From Podarcis erhardii (lineage: Eukaryota), in NCBI GenBank assembly GCA_964252035.1, contig OZ176206.1: a stretch of DNA of 64,000 nt. One strand, written 5' to 3'. The notes beneath the pieces were generated by a model. The model did no database searches, was not told where the DNA came from, and was given only the letters and a program-made list of their open reading frames with translations. The translations under genes were made by a program, and so were the position numbers. Below are positions 9,726 to 27,814 of this stretch, piece after piece; position 1 is the first letter of the stretch, and the number at the start of each line of letters is the position of its first letter.

Positions 9726-10295
9726 TTCTTTTTTTATAATAATTTTTATTGTTATACATTTTATAAAATTCCATCCAATTTTTCGTTTCAACCCGCCTAC
9801 AACAAATCTTAGTTATTTTTTGACTTCCTTCAGCGTCTCTGACAATCCTCCATGGTTATACCTTTAATACACATTCCCTTTTTTCGTATTGCCATTTTTC
9901 CTCCTTACTCCCATTATTTCTAATAAACAATACTTGTTTTCTTTTTTTTACAGTGCCTCTTTAAATCCCACTAGCGTTGTATTCACGCCACATATATTTT
10001 TCAGATAATCCACAAATTTCCCCCAGTCTTCGATGAACTTTTGATCTTTAGTATNNNNNNNNNNNNNNNNNNNNNNNNNNNNNNNNNNNNNNNNNNNNNN
10101 NNNNNNNNNNNNNNNNNNNNNNNNNNNNNNNNNNNNNNNNNNNNNNNNNNNNNNNNNNNNNNNNNNNNNNNNNNNNNNNNNNNNNNNNNNNNNNNNNNNN
10201 NNNNNNNNNNGGACGACCATCCCAGATAGAAGGAGTGTACTGTTCTTCGGTCAAGGGTATATGATAGCTGCGCTCCCCTGCTAGAACCTCCAAAC
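9726..10295 (-). mobile_element. Younger L1-clade insertion nested in an older L1, spanning the assembly gap
   Basis: 17-bp TSD aagatagcttctttttc at 9709-9725 and 10296-10312; poly(A)/AATAAA at the left end; ORF2 C-terminus KDQKFIEDWGKFVDYLKNICG...EAL* ending at 9948. Confidence 0.85.
10055..10210. other. Assembly gap (156 N)
   Basis: Run of n characters. Confidence 1.
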
Positions 10296-14184: not shown

Positions 14185-15851
14185 TTTTTTTTTAAAATAA
14201 TATTTATTAAAAGTTTCCAATTATAACAATATAAAAAAACAAAACATCCAAATTTAAAATCTTATTTTCTGTAACATCTTTCCAGGACTTCCCCTCCCCT
14301 CCCCCTCTTATATTCCAATTCTTACAAATAAATTCAGCAATTTATTATCCCAAATTTCAACCTTATTATCATTAACCCAATTTAAAAATATTTTCCCATC
14401 TCCTAAGATCGACCTATTCCCTTCCACGCGTTCCCCCCTTTAATATACATAGTAGATTAAAATATAATAAAATATAATATAATTTTACACCCTTTGGATT
14501 CCAAATTTCCCTCCCCCTTTTCCTGGTTGCGTTCCCCATATTAATCAACATCTGATGTCTTCCTGGAGCTCCCACACTTATTTAAACCATAGTCCTTTAC
14601 CAGTCTTCTTTAATTTTAAATGTCCAATCTTGGAAGGAGTCTATCTCAAAAAGGCCCATTTTTTCCATCCAGATTTTTATATACTTGGGAGTAAAAACTC
14701 CAATTTTATTTCTTAAACCTTTCAAATCTGGATGTCCCAAATGTTCCCACTTCCAACTTTGTCCAATTCTTATTATTCTTGTTGTTCTTGTTAATCTCTC
14801 TCCTCTTTCTTTTCCTGTTTTCCTGCACAAATGTTCTAATTCCAAAAGCTTCTAAATTCCACTGCAGAGGCTCTGTTATTCAGGAACGAAACATAATGCC
14901 AAGTCCCTTCCATTCTTCAATAGATAAGTCTATTGTCTACTTTAGTGTGGAAACCTCTGTAGCCAAAATAGTGTTCCATTTCTGCAGTTTCCCAGGAGAT
15001 AAAAAGTTCAGTCAAATTCGATGCCAACAACTTGTAATATCCCTCGGCTCCTCTGGGTGGATTGTAATAACTCAGTTCCCTTCCAGATCACGTCCACCAG
15101 TCAAAGTAACTTAATATTCCTTGTTTTAAACATTTTGTATCCAATTTGTAACAAATATAACCGGCAAAGTCCTCGTAACAAAGTTCTCATTTTTGTTCTT
15201 CTGCTTTGACAGCTCTTTGACAGCTGTCAAAACCTCTCCTTGTCTTCTCCCGGCGCTCTAACTAAAGCGCTCCCAGGTTCCGGGGGGGGGGGGTTGCTTT
15301 TTGATTAAATTCCACTTTTCTCCTCCAGCTCAGTCTTATAATTTTCCATCGCGAAATTTCATAACTTTATCAAAATAGGGTTGCGCTCAATCTTAGATGT
15401 TAAGTCCTTTACTTTAGCTCCTCTACAACAGGTGGGGGGCTGACTTCCTTTTTACGCCTCCCCCGCTCGTTCCAAATTCTTTAAAAATTTCTCGCCTTTT
15501 TTTAATTCAAGTTCCGATTACTCACGGGTTATGCTTTTAAGTCCAAATTTCCAATAGAAGAAGTCAGCGCTCTCCGTCGAATGGCATGCGGCTTCGCTCG
15601 GCAGGGGAAGCGGAGGACTCAAAGCACCACCCCCCCCCGTCACCCGTTCCGCAGCCTTTAAAAAGGCTCCTTCGCGGGTCGGGGGGGGCTCAAAAGGTGC
15701 CAGCCGAGTCACCATGTCCATGGGTTTCAGCGCCCATGGTTTTTAAGGGTCCCCGTGTCGCCGGCGCGGCAGGACCCAGCCCCTGCCGAGCAGGCTCCCT
15801 CCGGAGCTCGGAGGGAGTCCGCCATTCGGCGATGGCGCCAACCCGGAAGTC
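14185..15851 (-). mobile_element. Non-autonomous L1-like retroelement with intact 5' end, no recognisable ORF1/ORF2
   Basis: 21-bp TSD ccatatttaaccaccactact at 14164-14184 and 15852-15872; poly(A) and AATAAA (14203-14208 on minus); CpG-rich 5' end starting GACTTCCGGG. Confidence 0.85.
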
Positions 15852-15882
15852 CCATATTTAACCACCACTACTGAGAAGACCA

Positions 15883-16229
15883 GGGACGTGGGTGGCACTG
15901 TGGGTTGAACCACAGAGCCTAGGGCTTGCCGATTGGAAGGTCGGCGGTTCAAATCCCCGCGATGGGGCGAGCTCCCTTTGCTCGGTCCCTGCTCCTGCCA
16001 ACCTAGCAGTTCGAAAGCACGCAGTGCAAGTAGATAAATAGGTACCACTCTGGCAGGAAGGTAAATGGTGATTTCTGTGCGCTGCTCTGGTTCCCCAGAA
16101 GCGGCTTAGTCTTGCTGGCCACATGACCCAGAAACTGTACGCCGGCTCCCTTGGCCAGTAAAGCGAGATGAGAGCTGCATCCCCAGAGTTGTCCACGACT
16201 GGACCTAAGGGTCAGGGGTCCCTTTACCT
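15883..16229 (+). mobile_element. Sauria SINE, full length
   Basis: GGGACGTGGGTGGCACTGTGG head, B-box ggttcaaatcc, ctttacctt tail; 14-bp TSD tactgagaagacca at 15869-15882 and 16230-16243. Confidence 0.92.
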
Positions 16230-18600: not shown

Positions 18601-19083
18601 CTAGTATTAGCTATCTAATCTGCATCTTGGGGGCAATAATATGAATCAAAGTTTACAAGATAATGTATGTGAAATGCTTTGAACAGACTAAAGTGGAGTG
18701 TCTGTTTCTGATGAGGAAAATGTAGTTCAGAATAAAGCTTTCAGTTTTGGAGATTTGGTGTCTTTTGTATCTTTATTGCTTGGCTTGAGAGGCTAATTGA
18801 AGTGCTTTGTTCAGGAGAAAACAGCTGCTTAAACTCCCCCCACCCACTTCGTTATTTTTTGTGATCCAGACAAAAAAGTGGCAGTACGTATGAACACCAA
18901 GCAAGAACAATTCCTTTCACTTTTCAGGAGATCATGTAACAATTAGAGCAGGAATTGAAATTTAAAACATGCATTTTCATTCTGAATGGACATATTTTTG
19001 CTGTCACAAACTGAAGGCAGGGCATTGCTCAAGCACAGCTATTTTCAGAAAGCATGATTTGGATAGGCTTGAACTGTTGGTAA

Positions 19084-19438
19084 GGGACGCAGGTGGCGCT
19101 GTGGGTTAAATCATAGAGCCTAGGACTTGCCGATCAGAAGGTCGGCGGTTCAAATCCCCACGACGGGGTGAGCTCCTGTTGCTCGGTCCCTGCTCCTGCC
19201 AACCTAGCAGTTCGAAAGCACATCAAAGTGCAAGTAGATAAATAGGTACCGCCCCAGTGGGAAGGTAAACGGCGTTTTCGTGCGCTGCTCTGCTTCGCCA
19301 GAAGCGGCTTAGTCATGCTGGCCACATGACTCAGAAGCTGTACGCAGGCTCCCTCGGCCAATAAAGCGAGATGAGCACCGCAACCCCAGAGTCAGCCACG
19401 ACTGGACCTAATGGTTAGGGGTCTCTTTACCTTTACCT
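19084..19438 (+). mobile_element. Sauria SINE, full length
   Basis: A-box TGGCGCTGTGG, B-box GGTTCAAATCC, tttacctttacc tail; 11-bp TSD aactgttggta at 19072-19082 and 19441-19451. Confidence 0.92.
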
Positions 19439-19467
19439 AAAACTGTTGGTATTGTGAATGCCAGCGC

Positions 19468-19517
<50 letters not shown>

Positions 19518-19540
19518 CGCGCGCGCTTGAGAGAGAGAGC
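19468..19540. repeat. Compound microsatellite (TG)n(AG)n(GC)7 tt (GA)n
   Basis: Direct inspection. Confidence 0.95.
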
Positions 19541-20147
19541 TTGCTCGGTGTACAGCATGGTGCTGCACTAGCAACAGTCACCACCACAGTTAAAGTGAAC
19601 ATTGGGATTCGATGGAGACAAACCAGAGACATGCCCCAGTGCAAGGTATTTGACCCTGAGTGCCACCTCTACTTAACAGCACAAACCTACAAGCATAACA
19701 TTTTGGGCTGAGCATCTTCTGATCATACGTGGACTTTAAAGTAATCAGAAGAGGCCCTTTTACATGTATGTGTCCTGCCCCCATCTGGGGCATGGCTGAT
19801 AGGAACACACAGAAAGGCTTTTTTGGGTTGGTGCACAAAGTTGGTAGAAATTCCTACCCAAGAGTTCCATGCTGACCCCTTGATTTCTTTGAAGCTTGAA
19901 TTTGTTTTATTCTGGGTTGTTGTATTTGTTGTAAACCACTTTGAGTTTTTTCTTTAAAATATATAGTATAGAAATGAAAATCATCATCATCATCAATTGG
20001 GGGGGGGGTGGCGCCTAGACATTCCATTGTGGTGACCATAACCTAAGTTTAAGGTGGCATTTGGCAATTAGCTTATATAACTGAGTTTCCAACACTGGTC
20101 TTAGCCAGTGGTCAGGGATGGTGGCTTTTATAATCCAAAACATATGG

Positions 20148-21578
20148 TTATATTATGAGGCCGCATGCCTTTGTTGGGTAAAAGATTGGATCGTTATCAA
20201 AAATAAAGAGTTGTTAGACCTAGAGGGGTTCAATTTAAGATTTGGATGGCATGCCTATCTATGGCGAGACAAGGGAAGGGTCCATAAAGGTTTTTCTAAC
20301 CATATCTTCAGAGGGCCACTACTGGAAGTCTGGGAAAGGAATAAAAAATTGCTGGAGCAGAAAACACCCTGGTGGCTATCACCAATTGATATTTTAACAA
20401 TTAAAAAATCAAATCTTGAGGGGGAACGGTGGACATATGAGGACCTACTAACCAAAACAGAATCCGGGTGGAGGATTAGACCATATGAAGAAATAAAAAA
20501 TAAGTTGACTGGTTGGATTCAATATCATCAAATAAATTCAATATGGACGGAAGACAAAAAGATTGGAATAAGTGAGAAAAAATCCAGATTCCAGATTGAA
20601 ATAATAGAAAGTAAAACAAAATTACTATCAAAAATGTACAACCAGTTGCTTGAGTGGGACACCAAGGACGAGGAAGTAAAGGAGGTGATGGTGAAGTGGG
20701 CGGTAGATCTAGGGTATAACATAGAATTTGATAAATGGGAAGCTTTATGGCGCAAAGATATGAATTATTCAGCATGCACGACACTCAAAGAAAACATGTA
20801 CAAGATGATGTACAGATGGTACATAACGCCGATAAAATTACATAAAATTTATAGAACAGGTGATAAATTGTGTTGGAAATGCAAGAACAAGGAGGGCGAA
20901 TTCTTCCACATGTGGTGGACGTGCGAGATTCTCAAAAAATTTTGGGAATCTATTTATAATGAATTTAAAAAAATTCTCAAATATACGTTTGTCAAAAAGC
21001 CTGAAGCCTTCCTGCTGGGGATAATTGGCAAGGATATCAAAGAAGAAGATAGGACCTTTTTCCAATACGCAACAGCTGCCGCTAGAACCCTCATAGCACA
21101 GTGCTGGAAAACACCAAAAATCCCAACATTAAAGGAGTGGCAATTTAAATTATTGGATTATTTAGAATTGGCAAAATTGACACAAAAAATAAGAAATCAA
21201 AAACGTACAAAATTTAGTAATGAATGGGATAAATTTAGAACATATATGGAAATAGAGATAAGGGGTACATCAAAATGTTAATCAGAAATATATATGTATC
21301 AAAAAAAAAAAAATCACAGTAGGCATGAAATAACGCTTACTACGTTACAAATGTCATTTTGGAATAGATACAGCAGATAGACAACTAAGATAACATTATC
21401 CGAAATCGAGATAAAGGGAAGTCGATCAATGTTGTTGTAAAATTAATGTTAAGTTGTGTTGTTTGGGTAGTATGTATTGTATGTCTTTTTTCTTTTTTAT
21501 GTTTGTTTTATTTACTTTTGTCTTTTGTATGTTTGTGAAATATACTTATGCAAAACTTAATAAAAATTAAAAAAAAAA
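20148..21578 (+). mobile_element. Young 5'-truncated L1-clade LINE with an uninterrupted ORF2 C-terminal frame to 21281
   Basis: 18-bp TSD ataatccaaaacatatgg at 20130-20147 and 21579-21596; CX2CX8HX4C knuckle at 20871-20924; AATAAA at 21559-21564 then poly(A). Confidence 0.93.
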
Positions 21579-21673
21579 ATAATCCAAAACATATGGAAGG
21601 CATCAGTTCAGGAAAAATGAACTAAACACCCTCTGCACTTTTGTTTGTGTGTGTGTGTGTGTACGTGTGTGTA

Positions 21674-21914
21674 CAGTGGTACCTCAGTTTAAGAACAGCC
21701 CTGTTTACGAATTATTCAGTTTATGAACTCTGCAAAACTGGAAGTAGTGTCCCAGTTTGTCAACTTTACTTCGGTCTAAGAATGGAATCCGAATGGTGGA
21801 AGGGCACCGGCGGTGGGAGGCCTCATTAGGGAAAGCACGCCTTGGTTTAAGAACAATTTCGGTTTAAGCATGGACTTCTAGAACAGATTACGTTCGTAAA
21901 TCGAGGTACCACTT
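21674..21914. mobile_element. Tc1/mariner MITE
   Basis: TA-CAGTGGTACCTC ... GAGGTACCACTT-TA. Confidence 0.85.
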
Positions 21915-21932
21915 TATATACATATATATACA

Positions 21933-22174
21933 CAATGGTACCTCGGTTCCTGAACAGCTTAATTGTCGAACAAATCAGCTCCCGAATTCTGCAAATCTGG
22001 AAGTAAGTGTTCCAGTTTGCGAATGTTTTTTAGAAGCCGAATGTCCAACGCGGCTTCCGCTTGAGTGCAGGAAGCTCCTGCAGCCAATCAGAAGCTGAAC
22101 CCTGGTTTTCAAGCGGTTGTGGGAGTCAAATAGACTCCCACAACGGATTAAGGTTGAGAACCAAGTTACCACTT
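21933..22174. mobile_element. Tc1/mariner MITE, related family, older
   Basis: CAATGGTACCTC ... AAGTTACCACTT-TA, degraded TIRs. Confidence 0.75.
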
Positions 22175-22402
22175 TACATGAATTGTGGTATAGATGCAGT
22201 GTGCTGTGCATATAATGAAAATAGATGGTGATGGTGAGTTTAATAAACAACAATCCCCCACCCCTGAATGACTTTGTCTTGACCAGGAATGCCCTGAATC
22301 TTTCTAGTTACAGATAGGTAGCCGTGTTGGTCTGCCATAGTCAAAACAAAATAAAAAAATTCCTTCCAGTAGCACCTTAAAGACCAACTAAGTTAGTTCT
22401 TG

Positions 22403-22440
22403 GTATGAGCTTTCGTGTGCATGCACACTTCTTCAGATAC
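22403..22440 (-). ncRNA. Minimal type I hammerhead ribozyme motif, intact core
   Basis: Minus strand reads GUAU-CUGAAGA-A-GUGUG CAUG CACAC-GAAA-GCUC-AUAC. Stem I is GUAU/AUAC, stem II is 5 bp, stem III is the palindrome AGCU, and the CUC cleavage triplet is present. Confidence 0.8.
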
Positions 22441-22446
22441 ATCTGT

Positions 22447-22484
22447 GTATCTGAAGAAGTGTGCATGCACATGACAGCTCATAC
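22447..22484 (+). pseudogene. Mutated hammerhead ribozyme copy
   Basis: GUAU-CUGAAGA-A-GUGUG CAUG CACAU-GACA-GCUC-AUAC: C11.1>U and A14>C relative to the minus-strand copy. Confidence 0.75.
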
Positions 22485-24656
22485 CAAGAACTAACTTAGT
22501 TGGTCTTTAAGGTGCTACTGGAAGGAATTTTTTTATTTTGTTCTGAATCTTTCTGTTGGACTACTGTTGATGGTTATTGAATATTGTAAGTTTCCATCAT
22601 GCCACAGTACCTCCACAATATCCCACATTGCCCTCTGTGAGAGACTTGAGCTTCTCGTCATTTGTCTTCTGCACAGCCTTGCTGCTTGAGGCTTCATGGT
22701 GCTTGCAAGTATTTAGTGATTCCCAGGTGCTTCTTGTCAAAGCCCAAAGGGGAAGAGCAGAGAGTGAGAATGAGAATGAGAGTGTAGTGAGGAGGAAGTG
22801 GAGGCATGTAACACTTCTTCTGTGCCCAATGCCAGCTGGTAAATCACTCTCAGCACATCAAAGTGATATTAGATGTGCTATCTATCATTTCATGTATGTA
22901 CGTAACTTCTTTTTTTTACGGATAAGCCATGAACAAACTTTATAAATTAATTAGAGGGATTCACAGCCTTTCCCCCCTATCCTGACTTCCACATCCACCC
23001 CATGTTAGTTCCATTCTTCCTATATTGAGTTTGAATCTTTGCACTCCCTTGTTATGAGGGAAATGTGTGAACCAGCTATTCACTCAGTTTCATTGGTAAG
23101 TTGTGTTGCTAGAAATGCTTTCTTTATCTCAGCTTCATGGATAAGGATTATGACTTCAGCCTGTCCAAGTGGAATTTCCCAGTTGATATAACTACTGTGG
23201 AAAGCCAGCAAGCTTGTATCTTATCAATGACACATCCAAATTTCTTGCATCCATCTTTCTGCAACCCTTTTTTCCACTGGGAGAGAACGAAGGCTTATTT
23301 GGTATCACTGGTCTGACAGGTGCCAAATAGAGACTCAGAAGCTGCTGTCCTGTAATGAATTGGGAATTGTCTTTTGTGCAAAACTGAGGCTCTGCCAAGC
23401 ATTGGTCTGCCGGCTAACTATTCTGGCTAATCAAAACTCTGCCCAAATACAGTAATTATCTGCTTCACTTGTTCAGAATGCTTAAAAGCATTATTGTTTT
23501 GCTAATCAGGACAGTCTGTGAATTTTTTTCCAAAATGTTCCTGGTCCACTGGCCAATCTTTTGATATTGATGTCAGTCTCTTAGCCAATCTGATTTTCAC
23601 TTATTTCCATCTTATTTCCCCACCTTAAAAGAAAGGTTTGTTGTCTCCCAATAATTTGTTGCAGAGTGCTGTGCAAGCATGTTTTTTTCTTCAGGTCAGG
23701 TCAGAAAGCAGAAATATAATTATGAAGCATTTCTAGTTTACATAACTAGCTGGGCCTTCCGCTGTTGTGAAAATGGAAAGCAGAAGCTGGAGGCAGCTAT
23801 CTTGAATGCATGGGTTGAATTAGATTCTAGCAAGCGTGATGTTTCCTTCCTGCAGGCCTTCACAGCCCACCAACCTGAATCCAGGTCTTTCTGCAGCAGA
23901 ATGTCTCTGACAGGTATTTGACAGACAGCCTTGGTAGCCTACCGAGACAGGGTGGGGTGGGTTTACTGAGTTTCTGGTGGGCTGTATTGACTTGGTTTGC
24001 AGGCCATTCTGTGCCTTCTAGGATCATTTCTCCACCACCCTCTCCCTTGCCCTCCTTGCCTATTTCTAGTTTTAAAATGTGCCTGTAATCATTCTTTCTA
24101 GGCAAGCTTTTGAGAGAAGAAAGGAAACAGTCTTTATTTTGTTAGGAAATTTTTTGTGAGATTATAGAGGGATTTGTTTCTCATGGTGATTTCTCAAAGG
24201 CCATTCATTGCCTTTTGCCTCAGGAATGTGGCTAAAAATGCTACAGGCTAATTTTTTAAGCTAACATGAAGGAAGATCAGTGTAATACTCTTGATTGCCT
24301 TTTTTATGAAAGCATTTTGTATTATTGCTGTTTCTGGCTTCATGATTTATCATATGCTTTTTCTTGGAGTCGAGCACCACTTATGTTAGCTGCTTTTAAA
24401 CTGCAGGTGTCCACTGATAGAATTTCAGAGCTGGAGCAGAACGTGCTTGTTGGCTACCTGCCATTCTTTGGAGGGAAATGAGTCATGGGACTTAAAGGAA
24501 CGGCAAAAACCTGAGAGCAAAATTGTTGTAACACACGATAATATGGTTGATCATACCCTTTTTGTTTGAGGAGGAATTTAGACTGAGGAAGGAATAATTG
24601 GTATCCCAGGAGTTCAGTCCAATCATTTCATGTGCCCCCCAACACTGCCTGTAGCC

Positions 24657-27549: not shown

Positions 27550-27709
27550 GTGCCATAGAAGCACATGTTACTTACAGGACCTCATGCTCCGTTGTGAACT
27601 CCTGTGATGCTCTTCTGACTCCCTGAGGTGCCCTAGTTTTTAATTGAAAACCCTATCCCCGTACTAATAACTTAGTGACTACGTGAATTTTAGAGCATTG
27701 TGGGAAACA
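27550..27709 (+). other. SLC23A2: 5' UTR part of the first coding exon
   Basis: Pyrimidine-rich acceptor ttcatttctttatttctAG ends at 27549. An in-frame TAA at 27668-27670 precedes the ATG. The exon start is inferred, not transcript-proven. Confidence 0.7.
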
Positions 27710-27814
27710 ATGGGAATTGGCAAGAACACCACGTCTAAGTCAGTTGAAACTGGAAGTCCAACAGAGGGCAAATATGAGGATGAATCCAAGCATCCTGCTT
27801 TCTTCACACTACCA
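27710..27814 (+). CDS. SLC23A2: SVCT2 coding exon 1 ([35 protein letters not shown])
   Basis: ATG in strong Kozak context (ACAATGG); donor CCA|GTAAGT; 105 nt, phase 0. Confidence 0.96.

What the first reader, a model, noticed from the sequence alone, without database searches (positions are those of the whole stretch)
22294..22554. Penelope-type palindrome carrying a hammerhead ribozyme: intact antisense copy, core-mutated sense copy
Seen: a 237-bp insert with a 12-bp TSD, made mostly of two 96-bp inverted arms (22345-22440, 22447-22542; 94/96 identical; 6-nt spacer). The minus strand reads GUAU CUGAAGA A GUGUG-CAUG-CACAC GAAA GCUC^AUAC, with predicted cleavage between 22407 and 22406. The only two differences between the arms both fall in the plus-strand ribozyme (C11.1>U, A14>C). 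Established: PLE terminal repeats encode minimal type I hammerheads whose palindromic stem III needs dimerisation; an extra nucleotide after A9 is a known tolerated variant; A14 is essential. Inference: the copy that would be transcribed with SLC23A2 pre-mRNA is the inactivated one, consistent with selection against self-cleavage. Caveats: two mutations is a small sample, one is a CpG transition, and the long hairpin may sequester both motifs. The hairpin is also a candidate ADAR or Dicer substrate.
Basis: partly seen in the sequence, partly recalled or inferred. Interest (0 to 1): 0.8.

Follow-up and report, generated by a model that had tools for sequence, protein, structure and literature searches.

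The report
Penelope fold-back insertion with hammerhead motif
This is an ordinary young copy of a lizard Penelope-like retrotransposon fragment, inserted as two mirror-image arms that each carry a minimal hammerhead ribozyme motif; nothing shows that its two arm differences were selected.

Summary
A 237-bp insert (22306-22542) lies between perfect 12-bp target-site duplications. It consists of two head-to-head arms of 97 nt (95/97 identical, 4-nt spacer) plus a one-sided 39-bp extension. The minus-strand arm carries a complete minimal type I hammerhead, cutting at 22407^22406; chance expectation is 0.003 such motifs per window. The plus-strand arm differs only by C11.1>U and A14>C.

Inverted 5'-truncated copies, a one-sided 30-40-bp tail, a TSD and a hammerhead are the published signature of Penelope-like element (PLE) insertions. 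So this is a known kind of repeat.

The selection story is not supported:
- One difference sits at the arm's only CpG.
- The full pattern has a chance probability of 2-4% per locus.
- The sense ribozyme is always transcribed after its own antisense, giving a hairpin of -166 to -176 kcal/mol against about -7 for the ribozyme fold.
- No second sense copy for dimerisation exists in the 64 kb.

The insert lies 5.2 kb upstream of the first recognisable SLC23 coding exon, so co-transcription with the gene is plausible but unproven.

The scan has noted this element many times elsewhere in this genome, including intact sense-strand copies in other introns (unchecked notes).

The parts
22294..22305 (.). 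Left target-site duplication, CTGAATCTTTCT
   Evidence: Exact 12-nt direct repeat with 22543-22554; it abuts the insert ends.
22306..22344 (-). One-sided 39-bp 'tail'. This is the 3' extension of the minus-strand arm beyond the point where the other arm ends. It holds an AC-rich stretch, CAGACCAACACGG.
   Evidence: Not part of the inverted repeat inside the insert. A 30-40-bp tail present at only one end is a described PLE trait (PMC8557442). In PAc it equals the stretch between two reverse-transcription start sites (PMC11167929).
22345..22441 (-). Arm 1 (97 nt), sense on the minus strand. It runs from 5 nt ahead of the ribozyme core (C3) to the proximal end point.
   Evidence: Inverted repeat with 22446-22542, 95/97 identical.
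22403..22440 (-). Intact minimal type I hammerhead motif. Helix I 22440-22437 with 22406-22403; C3-A9 22436-22430; extra A 22429; helix II 22428-22415; G12 A13 A14 A15.1 22414-22411; G15.2 C16.2 22410-22409; U16.1 22408; C17 22407. Predicted cut 22407^22406.
   Evidence: Descriptor search gives the single intact hit in the window, against 0.003 expected. The architecture matches the PLE min-HHR of PMC4209133. Cleavage was not tested.
22442..22445 (.). 4-nt spacer (TCTG) at the centre of the palindrome, where the two arm 5' ends meet
22446..22542 (+). Arm 2 (97 nt), sense on the plus strand. It ends 39 nt short of arm 1 at its 3' end.
22447..22484 (+). Hammerhead motif with two changes: C11.1>U at 22472 (CpG to TpG) and A14>C at 22475
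   Evidence: It matches the descriptor only with GACA in place of GAAA.
22543..22554 (.). Right target-site duplication
27694..27811 (+). Context: first recognisable coding exon of the SLC23-family gene. ATG at 27710, candidate acceptor AG at 27692-27693, donor GTAAGT after 27811. It lies 5.2 kb downstream of the insert.
   Evidence: Six-frame reading. Downstream exons at 39.4, 50.2, 58.3, 59.9 and 61.6 kb hit Pfam Xan_ur_permease in collinear order on the plus strand. The closest solved structures are SLC23A1.

Best explanation
The feature is a young, non-coding fragment of a Penelope-like retrotransposon (PLE), inserted by target-primed reverse transcription. The template RNA began a few bases ahead of the element's minimal hammerhead. 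It was copied from two alternative internal start sites 39 nt apart, once on each strand of a target cut with a 12-bp stagger. The two cDNAs ran to the same RNA 5' end and were joined head to head. That gives two 97-nt mirror arms, a 4-nt centre, a tail at one end only, and a 12-bp TSD. Each arm inherited the hammerhead motif of the element's terminal repeat. That motif serves the element, if it serves anything, and not the host gene. After insertion, or through template or RT differences at insertion, one arm acquired a CpG transition and a nearby A>C transversion. These are best read as neutral. In this fold-back neither hammerhead is expected to cleave a read-through transcript, because its antisense partner is transcribed first, the pair forms a 97-bp duplex, and no second sense copy is available for dimerisation. 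Shown: the anatomy, the motif, the differences, the hairpin energies and the plus-strand orientation of the SLC23 gene. Inferred: the integration pathway (by analogy with PAc), the neutrality of the changes and the lack of cleavage.
For: The anatomy is: TSD, arms, spacer and one-sided 39-bp tail. The min-HHR motif is far beyond chance. Its traits are a 4-bp helix I, a long helix II, an extra base after A9, a G10.1-C11.1 pair and a palindromic 15.2-16.2 pair. These are the ones listed for metazoan PLE hammerheads, and dual motifs on opposite strands were already seen (PMC4209133). Craig et al. 2021 describe an adjacent inverted 5'-truncated copy and a 30-40-bp tail, often at one end only, as typical of PLE insertions (PMC8557442). 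The purified Anolis Poseidon protein cleaves and extends both DNA strands and starts reverse transcription at internal sites that delimit the tail. Its hammerhead is protein-assisted and not needed for insertion (PMC11167929). Both arms start within 4 nt of the same template base, which fits a defined RNA 5' end. The hairpin folds at -166.4 kcal/mol (minus strand) and -176.4 kcal/mol (plus strand), z about -28 to -30. The monomer hammerhead fold is -6.8 kcal/mol, with no excess stability over shuffles. There is no other copy or hammerhead in the 64 kb.
Against: The direction of the two changes therefore rests on the hammerhead consensus and on the perfect 14-nt palindrome of helix II in the intact arm. 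Homology to an RT/GIY-YIG-encoding PLE was not shown. No Rfam hammerhead model hits the motif. The two differences lie 3 nt apart (chance about 6-9%). That hints at a single event or a variant template rather than two independent neutral hits. A recent preprint reports depletion of tandem retrozymes from Xenopus introns, so some selection against genic hammerhead repeats may exist in general.
Confidence: 0.85

Rival explanations
1. The fold-back lies in the SLC23A2 pre-mRNA, and the sense-strand hammerhead was inactivated because self-cleavage of the pre-mRNA was selected against, while the antisense copy stayed intact.
For: The gene is on the plus strand and the two differences both fall in the plus-strand motif, one at invariant A14. 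That pattern has 2-4% chance probability for one pre-specified locus. Tandem retrozymes are reported as depleted from Xenopus introns (bioRxiv 10.64898/2026.07.22.740005).
Against: The sample is two changes, and one is at the only CpG. The locus was picked from many, with 139 notes for this genome. The sense ribozyme is preceded by its antisense and buried in a hairpin of -176 kcal/mol. There is no dimer partner in 64 kb. PLE min-HHRs cleave poorly even as dimers, and the Anolis one needs its protein. The site is upstream of the first coding exon, so transcription with the gene is unproven. Unchecked notes report intact sense copies in MAPK14, VGLL4 and RAPGEF5 introns.
Confidence: 0.04
2. Same element, different origin of the palindrome. 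A single cDNA reached the RNA 5' end, snapped back on itself and primed its own second strand. The second arm is then a copy of the first, and the 4-nt spacer is the hairpin loop.
For: The spacer is very short at 4 nt, and the arms start at the same base. The arm without the tail ends where 3 of the next 4 template bases match the target (TTGA against CTGA), as expected if the copy was resolved by microhomology.
Against: The one in vitro PLE system shows cleavage and extension of both strands, with the same internal start sites on each (PMC11167929). That alone explains inverted copies and the one-sided tail. One locus cannot separate the two routes.
Confidence: 0.2
3. The hairpin has been taken over by the host or by genome defence as a source of small RNAs or as an ADAR editing substrate.
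For: It is a near-perfect 97-bp stem with a 4-nt loop. It gives sub-threshold matches to long-hairpin miRNA models.
Against: All Rfam matches are far below gathering scores and equal on both strands, so they are generic hairpin matches. There is no conservation or expression evidence, and the insertion is young.
Confidence: 0.05
4. It is a foldback or MITE-type DNA transposon with long terminal inverted repeats, not a retroelement.
For: It has long inverted arms, a tiny centre and a TSD.
Against: A 12-bp TSD and a 39-bp extension at only one end are not expected for cut-and-paste elements. The arms carry a PLE-type min-HHR at the inner end, and the layout equals the published PLE insertion scheme.
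Confidence: 0.02

Closest known systems
Minimal hammerheads (min-HHR) in the pseudo-LTRs of metazoan Penelope-like elements (Cervera and De la Pena 2014, PMC4209133)
   Same: Type I topology, a 4-bp helix I and a long helix II. An unpaired base between A9 and 10.1, a G10.1-C11.1 pair, and no real helix III but a palindromic 15.2-16.2 pair (AGCU) that allows dimer formation. The motifs are widespread as single or opposite-strand pairs from truncated PLEs and were reported in reptiles.
   Different: Position 7 is A (CUGAAGA) rather than the commoner U; this position is variable. The family was not linked here to a coding PLE, and activity was not tested.
PAc, the Poseidon element of Anolis carolinensis (PMC11167929)
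   Same: A lizard PLE with its hammerhead at the pLTR end. Reverse transcription starts about 100-140 nt downstream of the hammerhead, at two internal sites that delimit a 30-40-bp tail. Both target strands are cut and extended.
   Different: In PAc the ORF starts at helix II and the cut site is 26 bp after the start codon. Here the only ATG in the motif opens a 9-codon frame, so this is another family or a non-coding derivative. None of four 11-14-nt probes from the element (hammerhead, arm, tail) occurs in the PAc supplementary files.
General PLE insertion architecture (Evgen'ev and Arkhipova 2005; Craig et al. 2021, PMC8557442)
   Same: An inverted 5'-truncated copy adjoining the element, a 30-40-bp tail at one end, and a TSD.
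   Different: Here both copies are truncated to the last ~100-140 nt, so there is no ORF and no direct pLTR.
Non-LTR retrozymes (Cervera and De la Pena 2020, PMC7229834; Li et al. 2026 preprint)
   Same: Short non-coding units with type I hammerheads, derived from PLE terminal regions.
   Different: Retrozymes are direct tandem repeats that can yield circular RNAs by double cleavage. This locus has inverted copies, only one sense motif per transcript and no tandem partner.
L1 twin priming (from my own knowledge, not checked here)
   Same: Both ends of a staggered break prime reverse transcription, giving inverted segments within one TSD.
   Different: Twin priming inverts different parts of the RNA. 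Here both arms copy the same part, giving a true palindrome.

Membership tests
Penelope-like element insertion | Adjacent inverted 5'-truncated copy forming inverted repeats | tested here: met
   Arms 22345-22441 and 22446-22542, 95/97 identical, head to head. The trait is described in PMC8557442.
Penelope-like element insertion | 30-40-bp tail extension, often at one end only | tested here: met
   A 39-bp extension, 22306-22344, at the left end only.
Penelope-like element insertion | Target-site duplication bounding the whole complex | tested here: met
   12/12 TSD.
Penelope-like element insertion | Hammerhead motif in the terminal (pLTR) region | tested here: met
   A min-HHR sits at the inner end of each arm.
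Penelope-like element insertion | Sequence homology to an element encoding a telomerase-like RT and a GIY-YIG endonuclease | not testable with these tools
   The insert is 237 bp and non-coding. There is no other copy in the window. No eukaryotic genome or repeat library was available, and the public collections searched hold no relative.
Hammerhead ribozyme, type I minimal (PLE min-HHR) | Invariant core C3 U4 G5 A6 N7 G8 A9 / G12 A13 A14 / A15.1-U16.1 / H17 | tested here: met
   Met on the minus strand (22436-22407). Not met on the plus strand, where A14 is C.
Hammerhead ribozyme, type I minimal (PLE min-HHR) | Helices I and II with a G10.1-C11.1 closing pair, and a palindromic 15.2-16.2 pair for dimeric helix III | tested here: met
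   Helix I is 4 bp, helix II is 5 bp plus a 4-nt loop (a 14-nt palindrome), and AGCU is present. The plus arm has G-U at 10.1-11.1.
Hammerhead ribozyme, type I minimal (PLE min-HHR) | Self-cleavage at H17 | not testable with these tools
   This needs an in vitro or in vivo assay. Published PLE min-HHRs cleave weakly, as dimers or with protein.
Rfam hammerhead families (for example Hammerhead_1) | Score at or above the gathering threshold of the covariance model | tested here: not met
   No hammerhead hit at gathering score on the window, and none at E<=10 on the locus or on a single arm. This is expected, because the motif lacks helix III. Cervera and De la Pena also needed a dedicated descriptor.
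Non-LTR retrozyme | Direct tandem repeats, each with a hammerhead | tested here: not met
   The copies are inverted and no tandem or further copy exists in the window.
miRNA precursor families hit by cmscan | Score at or above the gathering threshold | tested here: not met
   The best hit is 66.6 bits against a gathering score of 211 (MIR8562). The others are also below threshold and score equally on both strands.

The most novel reading that the evidence does not exclude
Intronic Penelope fold-backs in this lizard are under strand-specific selection, so that hammerheads lying sense to host genes lose core bases faster than antisense or intergenic ones. This locus would be one visible case.
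Probability: 0.04. Interest if true: 0.55.

Novelty: already known. Interest (0 to 1): 0.1.

Why it matters
As it stands this is a routine repeat annotation: one more truncated Penelope-like insertion with the family's hammerhead motif. Its use is as a clean textbook example. It has a perfect TSD, two arms that start at the same template base, and a tail at one end. Together with many other copies, such examples could help define the element's RNA 5' end and its two reverse-transcription start sites in vivo. The selection idea would matter only if a genome-wide census showed strand bias, and one locus with two changes cannot show that.

Tried and rejected
- Rfam: gathering thresholds on the whole window, and E<=10 on the locus and on one arm. 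There was no hammerhead hit, only sub-threshold generic hairpin matches.
- My first IUPAC pattern was one base out of register and found nothing. A descriptor script replaced it.
- BLAST of the unit against the window found no further copy.
- Exact and degenerate pattern scans of the metagenome, prokaryotic-genome and viral collections. The degenerate pattern gave 30 loci. BLAST and reading the two best showed that all were chance matches.
- A full-text search for element strings in papers, and in the supplements of PMC11167929 and PMC4209133, found nothing.
- Lunse et al. 2017 (PMC5785218) is not held.
- The energy of the double-hammerhead dimer could not be evaluated, because the structure is formally a pseudoknot. 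The co-fold minimum is instead a 14-bp intermolecular helix II duplex at -32.4 kcal/mol.
- Pfam on the ten longest ORFs gave nothing useful.
- The MITE/foldback DNA-transposon and retrozyme readings were considered and rejected on TSD length, the one-sided tail and the inverted rather than tandem layout.

Full report
**The observation.** The sequence is as described. CTGAATCTTTCT occurs at 22294-22305 and again at 22543-22554, and it brackets a 237-bp insert. The repeat finder reports inverted arms of 101 nt at 97% complementarity, 4 nt apart. The outer 4 nt of that match run into the right TSD. Inside the insert the arms are therefore 22345-22441 and 22446-22542: 97 nt, 95/97 identical, with spacer 22442-22445. 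The left end has 39 nt (22306-22344) with no counterpart on the right. The only differences between the arms are at 22415/22472 and 22412/22475.

**The ribozyme motif.** The minus strand reads GUAU CUGAAGA A GUGUGCAUGCACAC GAAA GC U C^AUAC. C3 is at 22436 and the predicted cut is between 22407 and 22406.
- I wrote a descriptor for the minimal hammerhead. It requires helix I of at least 4 bp, CUGANGA, an optional extra base, helix II of at least 4 bp, GAAA, a palindromic insert, U, H, and the 3' strand of helix I.
- The descriptor finds this as the single intact hit in 64 kb on both strands. In 300 second-order Markov random windows the mean was 0.003 hits.
- The plus-strand copy matches only if GACA replaces GAAA, and it has U at 11.1.
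- Rfam finds no hammerhead, at gathering thresholds or at E<=10. This is expected for a motif with no helix III. Cervera and De la Pena also needed a special descriptor (PMC4209133).
- That paper lists the same traits for metazoan PLE hammerheads: a short helix I, a long helix II, an unpaired base between 9 and 10.1, a G10.1-C11.1 pair and a palindromic 15.2-16.2 pair. It also notes pairs of motifs on opposite strands and their presence in reptiles.

**What the element is.** Craig et al. 2021 describe PLE insertions as highly 5'-truncated. They often have an inverted 5'-truncated copy immediately adjacent and a 30-40-bp tail, often at one end only (PMC8557442). The locus shows all of this, plus a TSD. 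The in vitro study of the Anolis Poseidon element (PAc) supplies a mechanism (PMC11167929).
- The protein cuts and extends both target strands.
- It starts reverse transcription at internal sites of the RNA.
- The tail corresponds to the stretch between two such start sites.

Here one arm ends at ...ATTTTGTT and the other 39 nt further on, after an AC-rich stretch. Both arms begin within 4 nt of the same base, 5 nt ahead of C3. The simplest reading is two cDNAs made on the two strands of a 12-bp staggered break, each running to the same RNA 5' end, then joined head to head. A snap-back of a single cDNA would give the same product and cannot be excluded. I could not link the unit to a coding PLE. 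The window holds no other copy, and the searchable public collections hold none. Notes from other windows of this genome call it a very abundant lizard PLE whose copies mostly begin at one fixed base before the ribozyme. I did not check those notes.

**Gene context.** Stop-free segments on the plus strand at 39.4, 50.2, 58.3, 59.9 and 61.6 kb hit Pfam Xan_ur_permease at profile positions that rise in window order. One of them matches solved SLC23A1 structures at E 1e-21. Further exons lie at 36.6, 43.5, 48.9 and 55.2 kb. An N-terminal exon with its ATG at 27710 reads like the long N-terminus of SVCT2. The paralogue assignment rests on my recollection of that N-terminus.

But the insert lies 5.2 kb upstream of the first recognisable coding exon.
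- That exon is preceded by a candidate acceptor (TTTTAG at 27688-27693).
- No CpG-rich stretch lies between 22.5 and 27.7 kb.
- Mammalian SVCT2 has upstream non-coding first exons (PMC3332055).

A 5'-UTR intron location is therefore plausible. It is not shown.

**The selection inference.** Several points weigh against it.
- The C>U change is at the only CpG of the 97-nt arm, which is the most mutable site.
- With two differences placed at random, both fall in the 38-nt motif in 15-26% of trials. Both fall in the plus arm, with at least one at an invariant core base, in 2-4% of trials, depending on the CpG weight.
- This locus was selected from a genome for which the scan holds 139 notes containing both words, hammerhead and Penelope. 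A 2-4% pattern is expected to turn up.
- The two differences are 3 nt apart (6-9% by chance). That fits a single event or a variant template as well as two independent hits.

Mechanistically, the sense motif is always the downstream arm of a head-to-head palindrome, so its antisense is transcribed first.
- The full insert folds into one hairpin of -166.4 kcal/mol (minus strand) or -176.4 kcal/mol (plus strand), with z-scores near -28 and -30.
- The hammerhead fold of a free arm is worth -6.8 kcal/mol and is no more stable than shuffles.
- The motif has no helix III of its own and needs a second sense copy. None exists in the window.
- In a free dimer the favoured pairing is a 14-bp intermolecular helix II duplex, not the double hammerhead.
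- Published PLE min-HHRs cleave weakly even as dimers. The Anolis one cleaves only with its protein, and no cleaved ends were seen in RNA-seq.

An intact sense copy here would therefore be nearly harmless, and there is little for selection to act on. Unchecked notes from other windows report intact sense-strand copies in MAPK14, VGLL4 and RAPGEF5 introns. In favour of some general constraint, a 2026 preprint reports that tandem retrozymes are under-represented in Xenopus introns. That result concerns tandem, cleavage-competent arrays and gives no strand or core analysis.

**Other readings.** The hairpin's matches to miRNA models are all far below gathering scores and score equally on both strands, so they reflect a long stem only. 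A DNA-transposon foldback is unlikely, given the 12-bp TSD, the one-sided tail and the PLE-type ribozyme. A retrozyme is excluded by the inverted, non-tandem layout.

**Verdict.** The thing is a known kind of repeat copy, seen many times in this genome by this scan. The proposed selective inactivation is unsupported. Interest is low. The one test that could raise it is a genome-wide, age-matched comparison of core mutations by orientation, which these tools cannot run.

Noticed in passing
window 20118-21281 (+), A-runs at about 21302-21314 and 21567-21580: A 387-codon open frame with no Pfam hit. It ends in a Cys/His pattern (CWKC...H...C) that I recall as typical of the C-terminus of L1 ORF2 proteins, and A-rich runs follow it. 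It is probably a 5'-truncated L1 about 1 kb upstream of the Penelope insert.
   Followed up: partly
window 21675-21910 and 21935-22170 (+): Two similar SINE-like units in direct orientation. Each starts with (C)AGTGGTACCTC / AATGGTACCTCGGTT, and a (TG)n microsatellite lies just before them at 21645-21672. Not identified.
   Followed up: no
window 27710 to 61700 (+): Ten coding exons of an SLC23-family (SVCT2-like) transporter on the plus strand, at about 27.7, 36.7, 39.4, 43.5, 48.9, 50.2, 55.2, 58.4, 59.9 and 61.6 kb. Five hit Pfam Xan_ur_permease in collinear order.
   Followed up: partly
window 22306-22446 (-): In the single 141-nt unit RNA the 5' end (ACAGAUGUA) pairs with the 3' tail (UACCUAUCUGU) in the minimum-energy fold, though the fold is no more stable than shuffles. 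The 4-nt centre of the palindrome (CAGA/TCTG) also resembles the ATCTGT of the tail. This may be chance or may bear on how the cDNA ends are joined.
   Followed up: no
window 19001-19600 and 15401-16200: CpG-rich stretches (GC 0.53-0.65, CpG observed/expected 0.7-0.9) upstream of the insert. The second lies in what another note calls an L1-like element. The first could be a repeat or a candidate promoter or first exon for the SLC23 gene.
   Followed up: no
window 10055-10210: A run of 156 N (a gap or masked stretch), left as it is.
   Followed up: no
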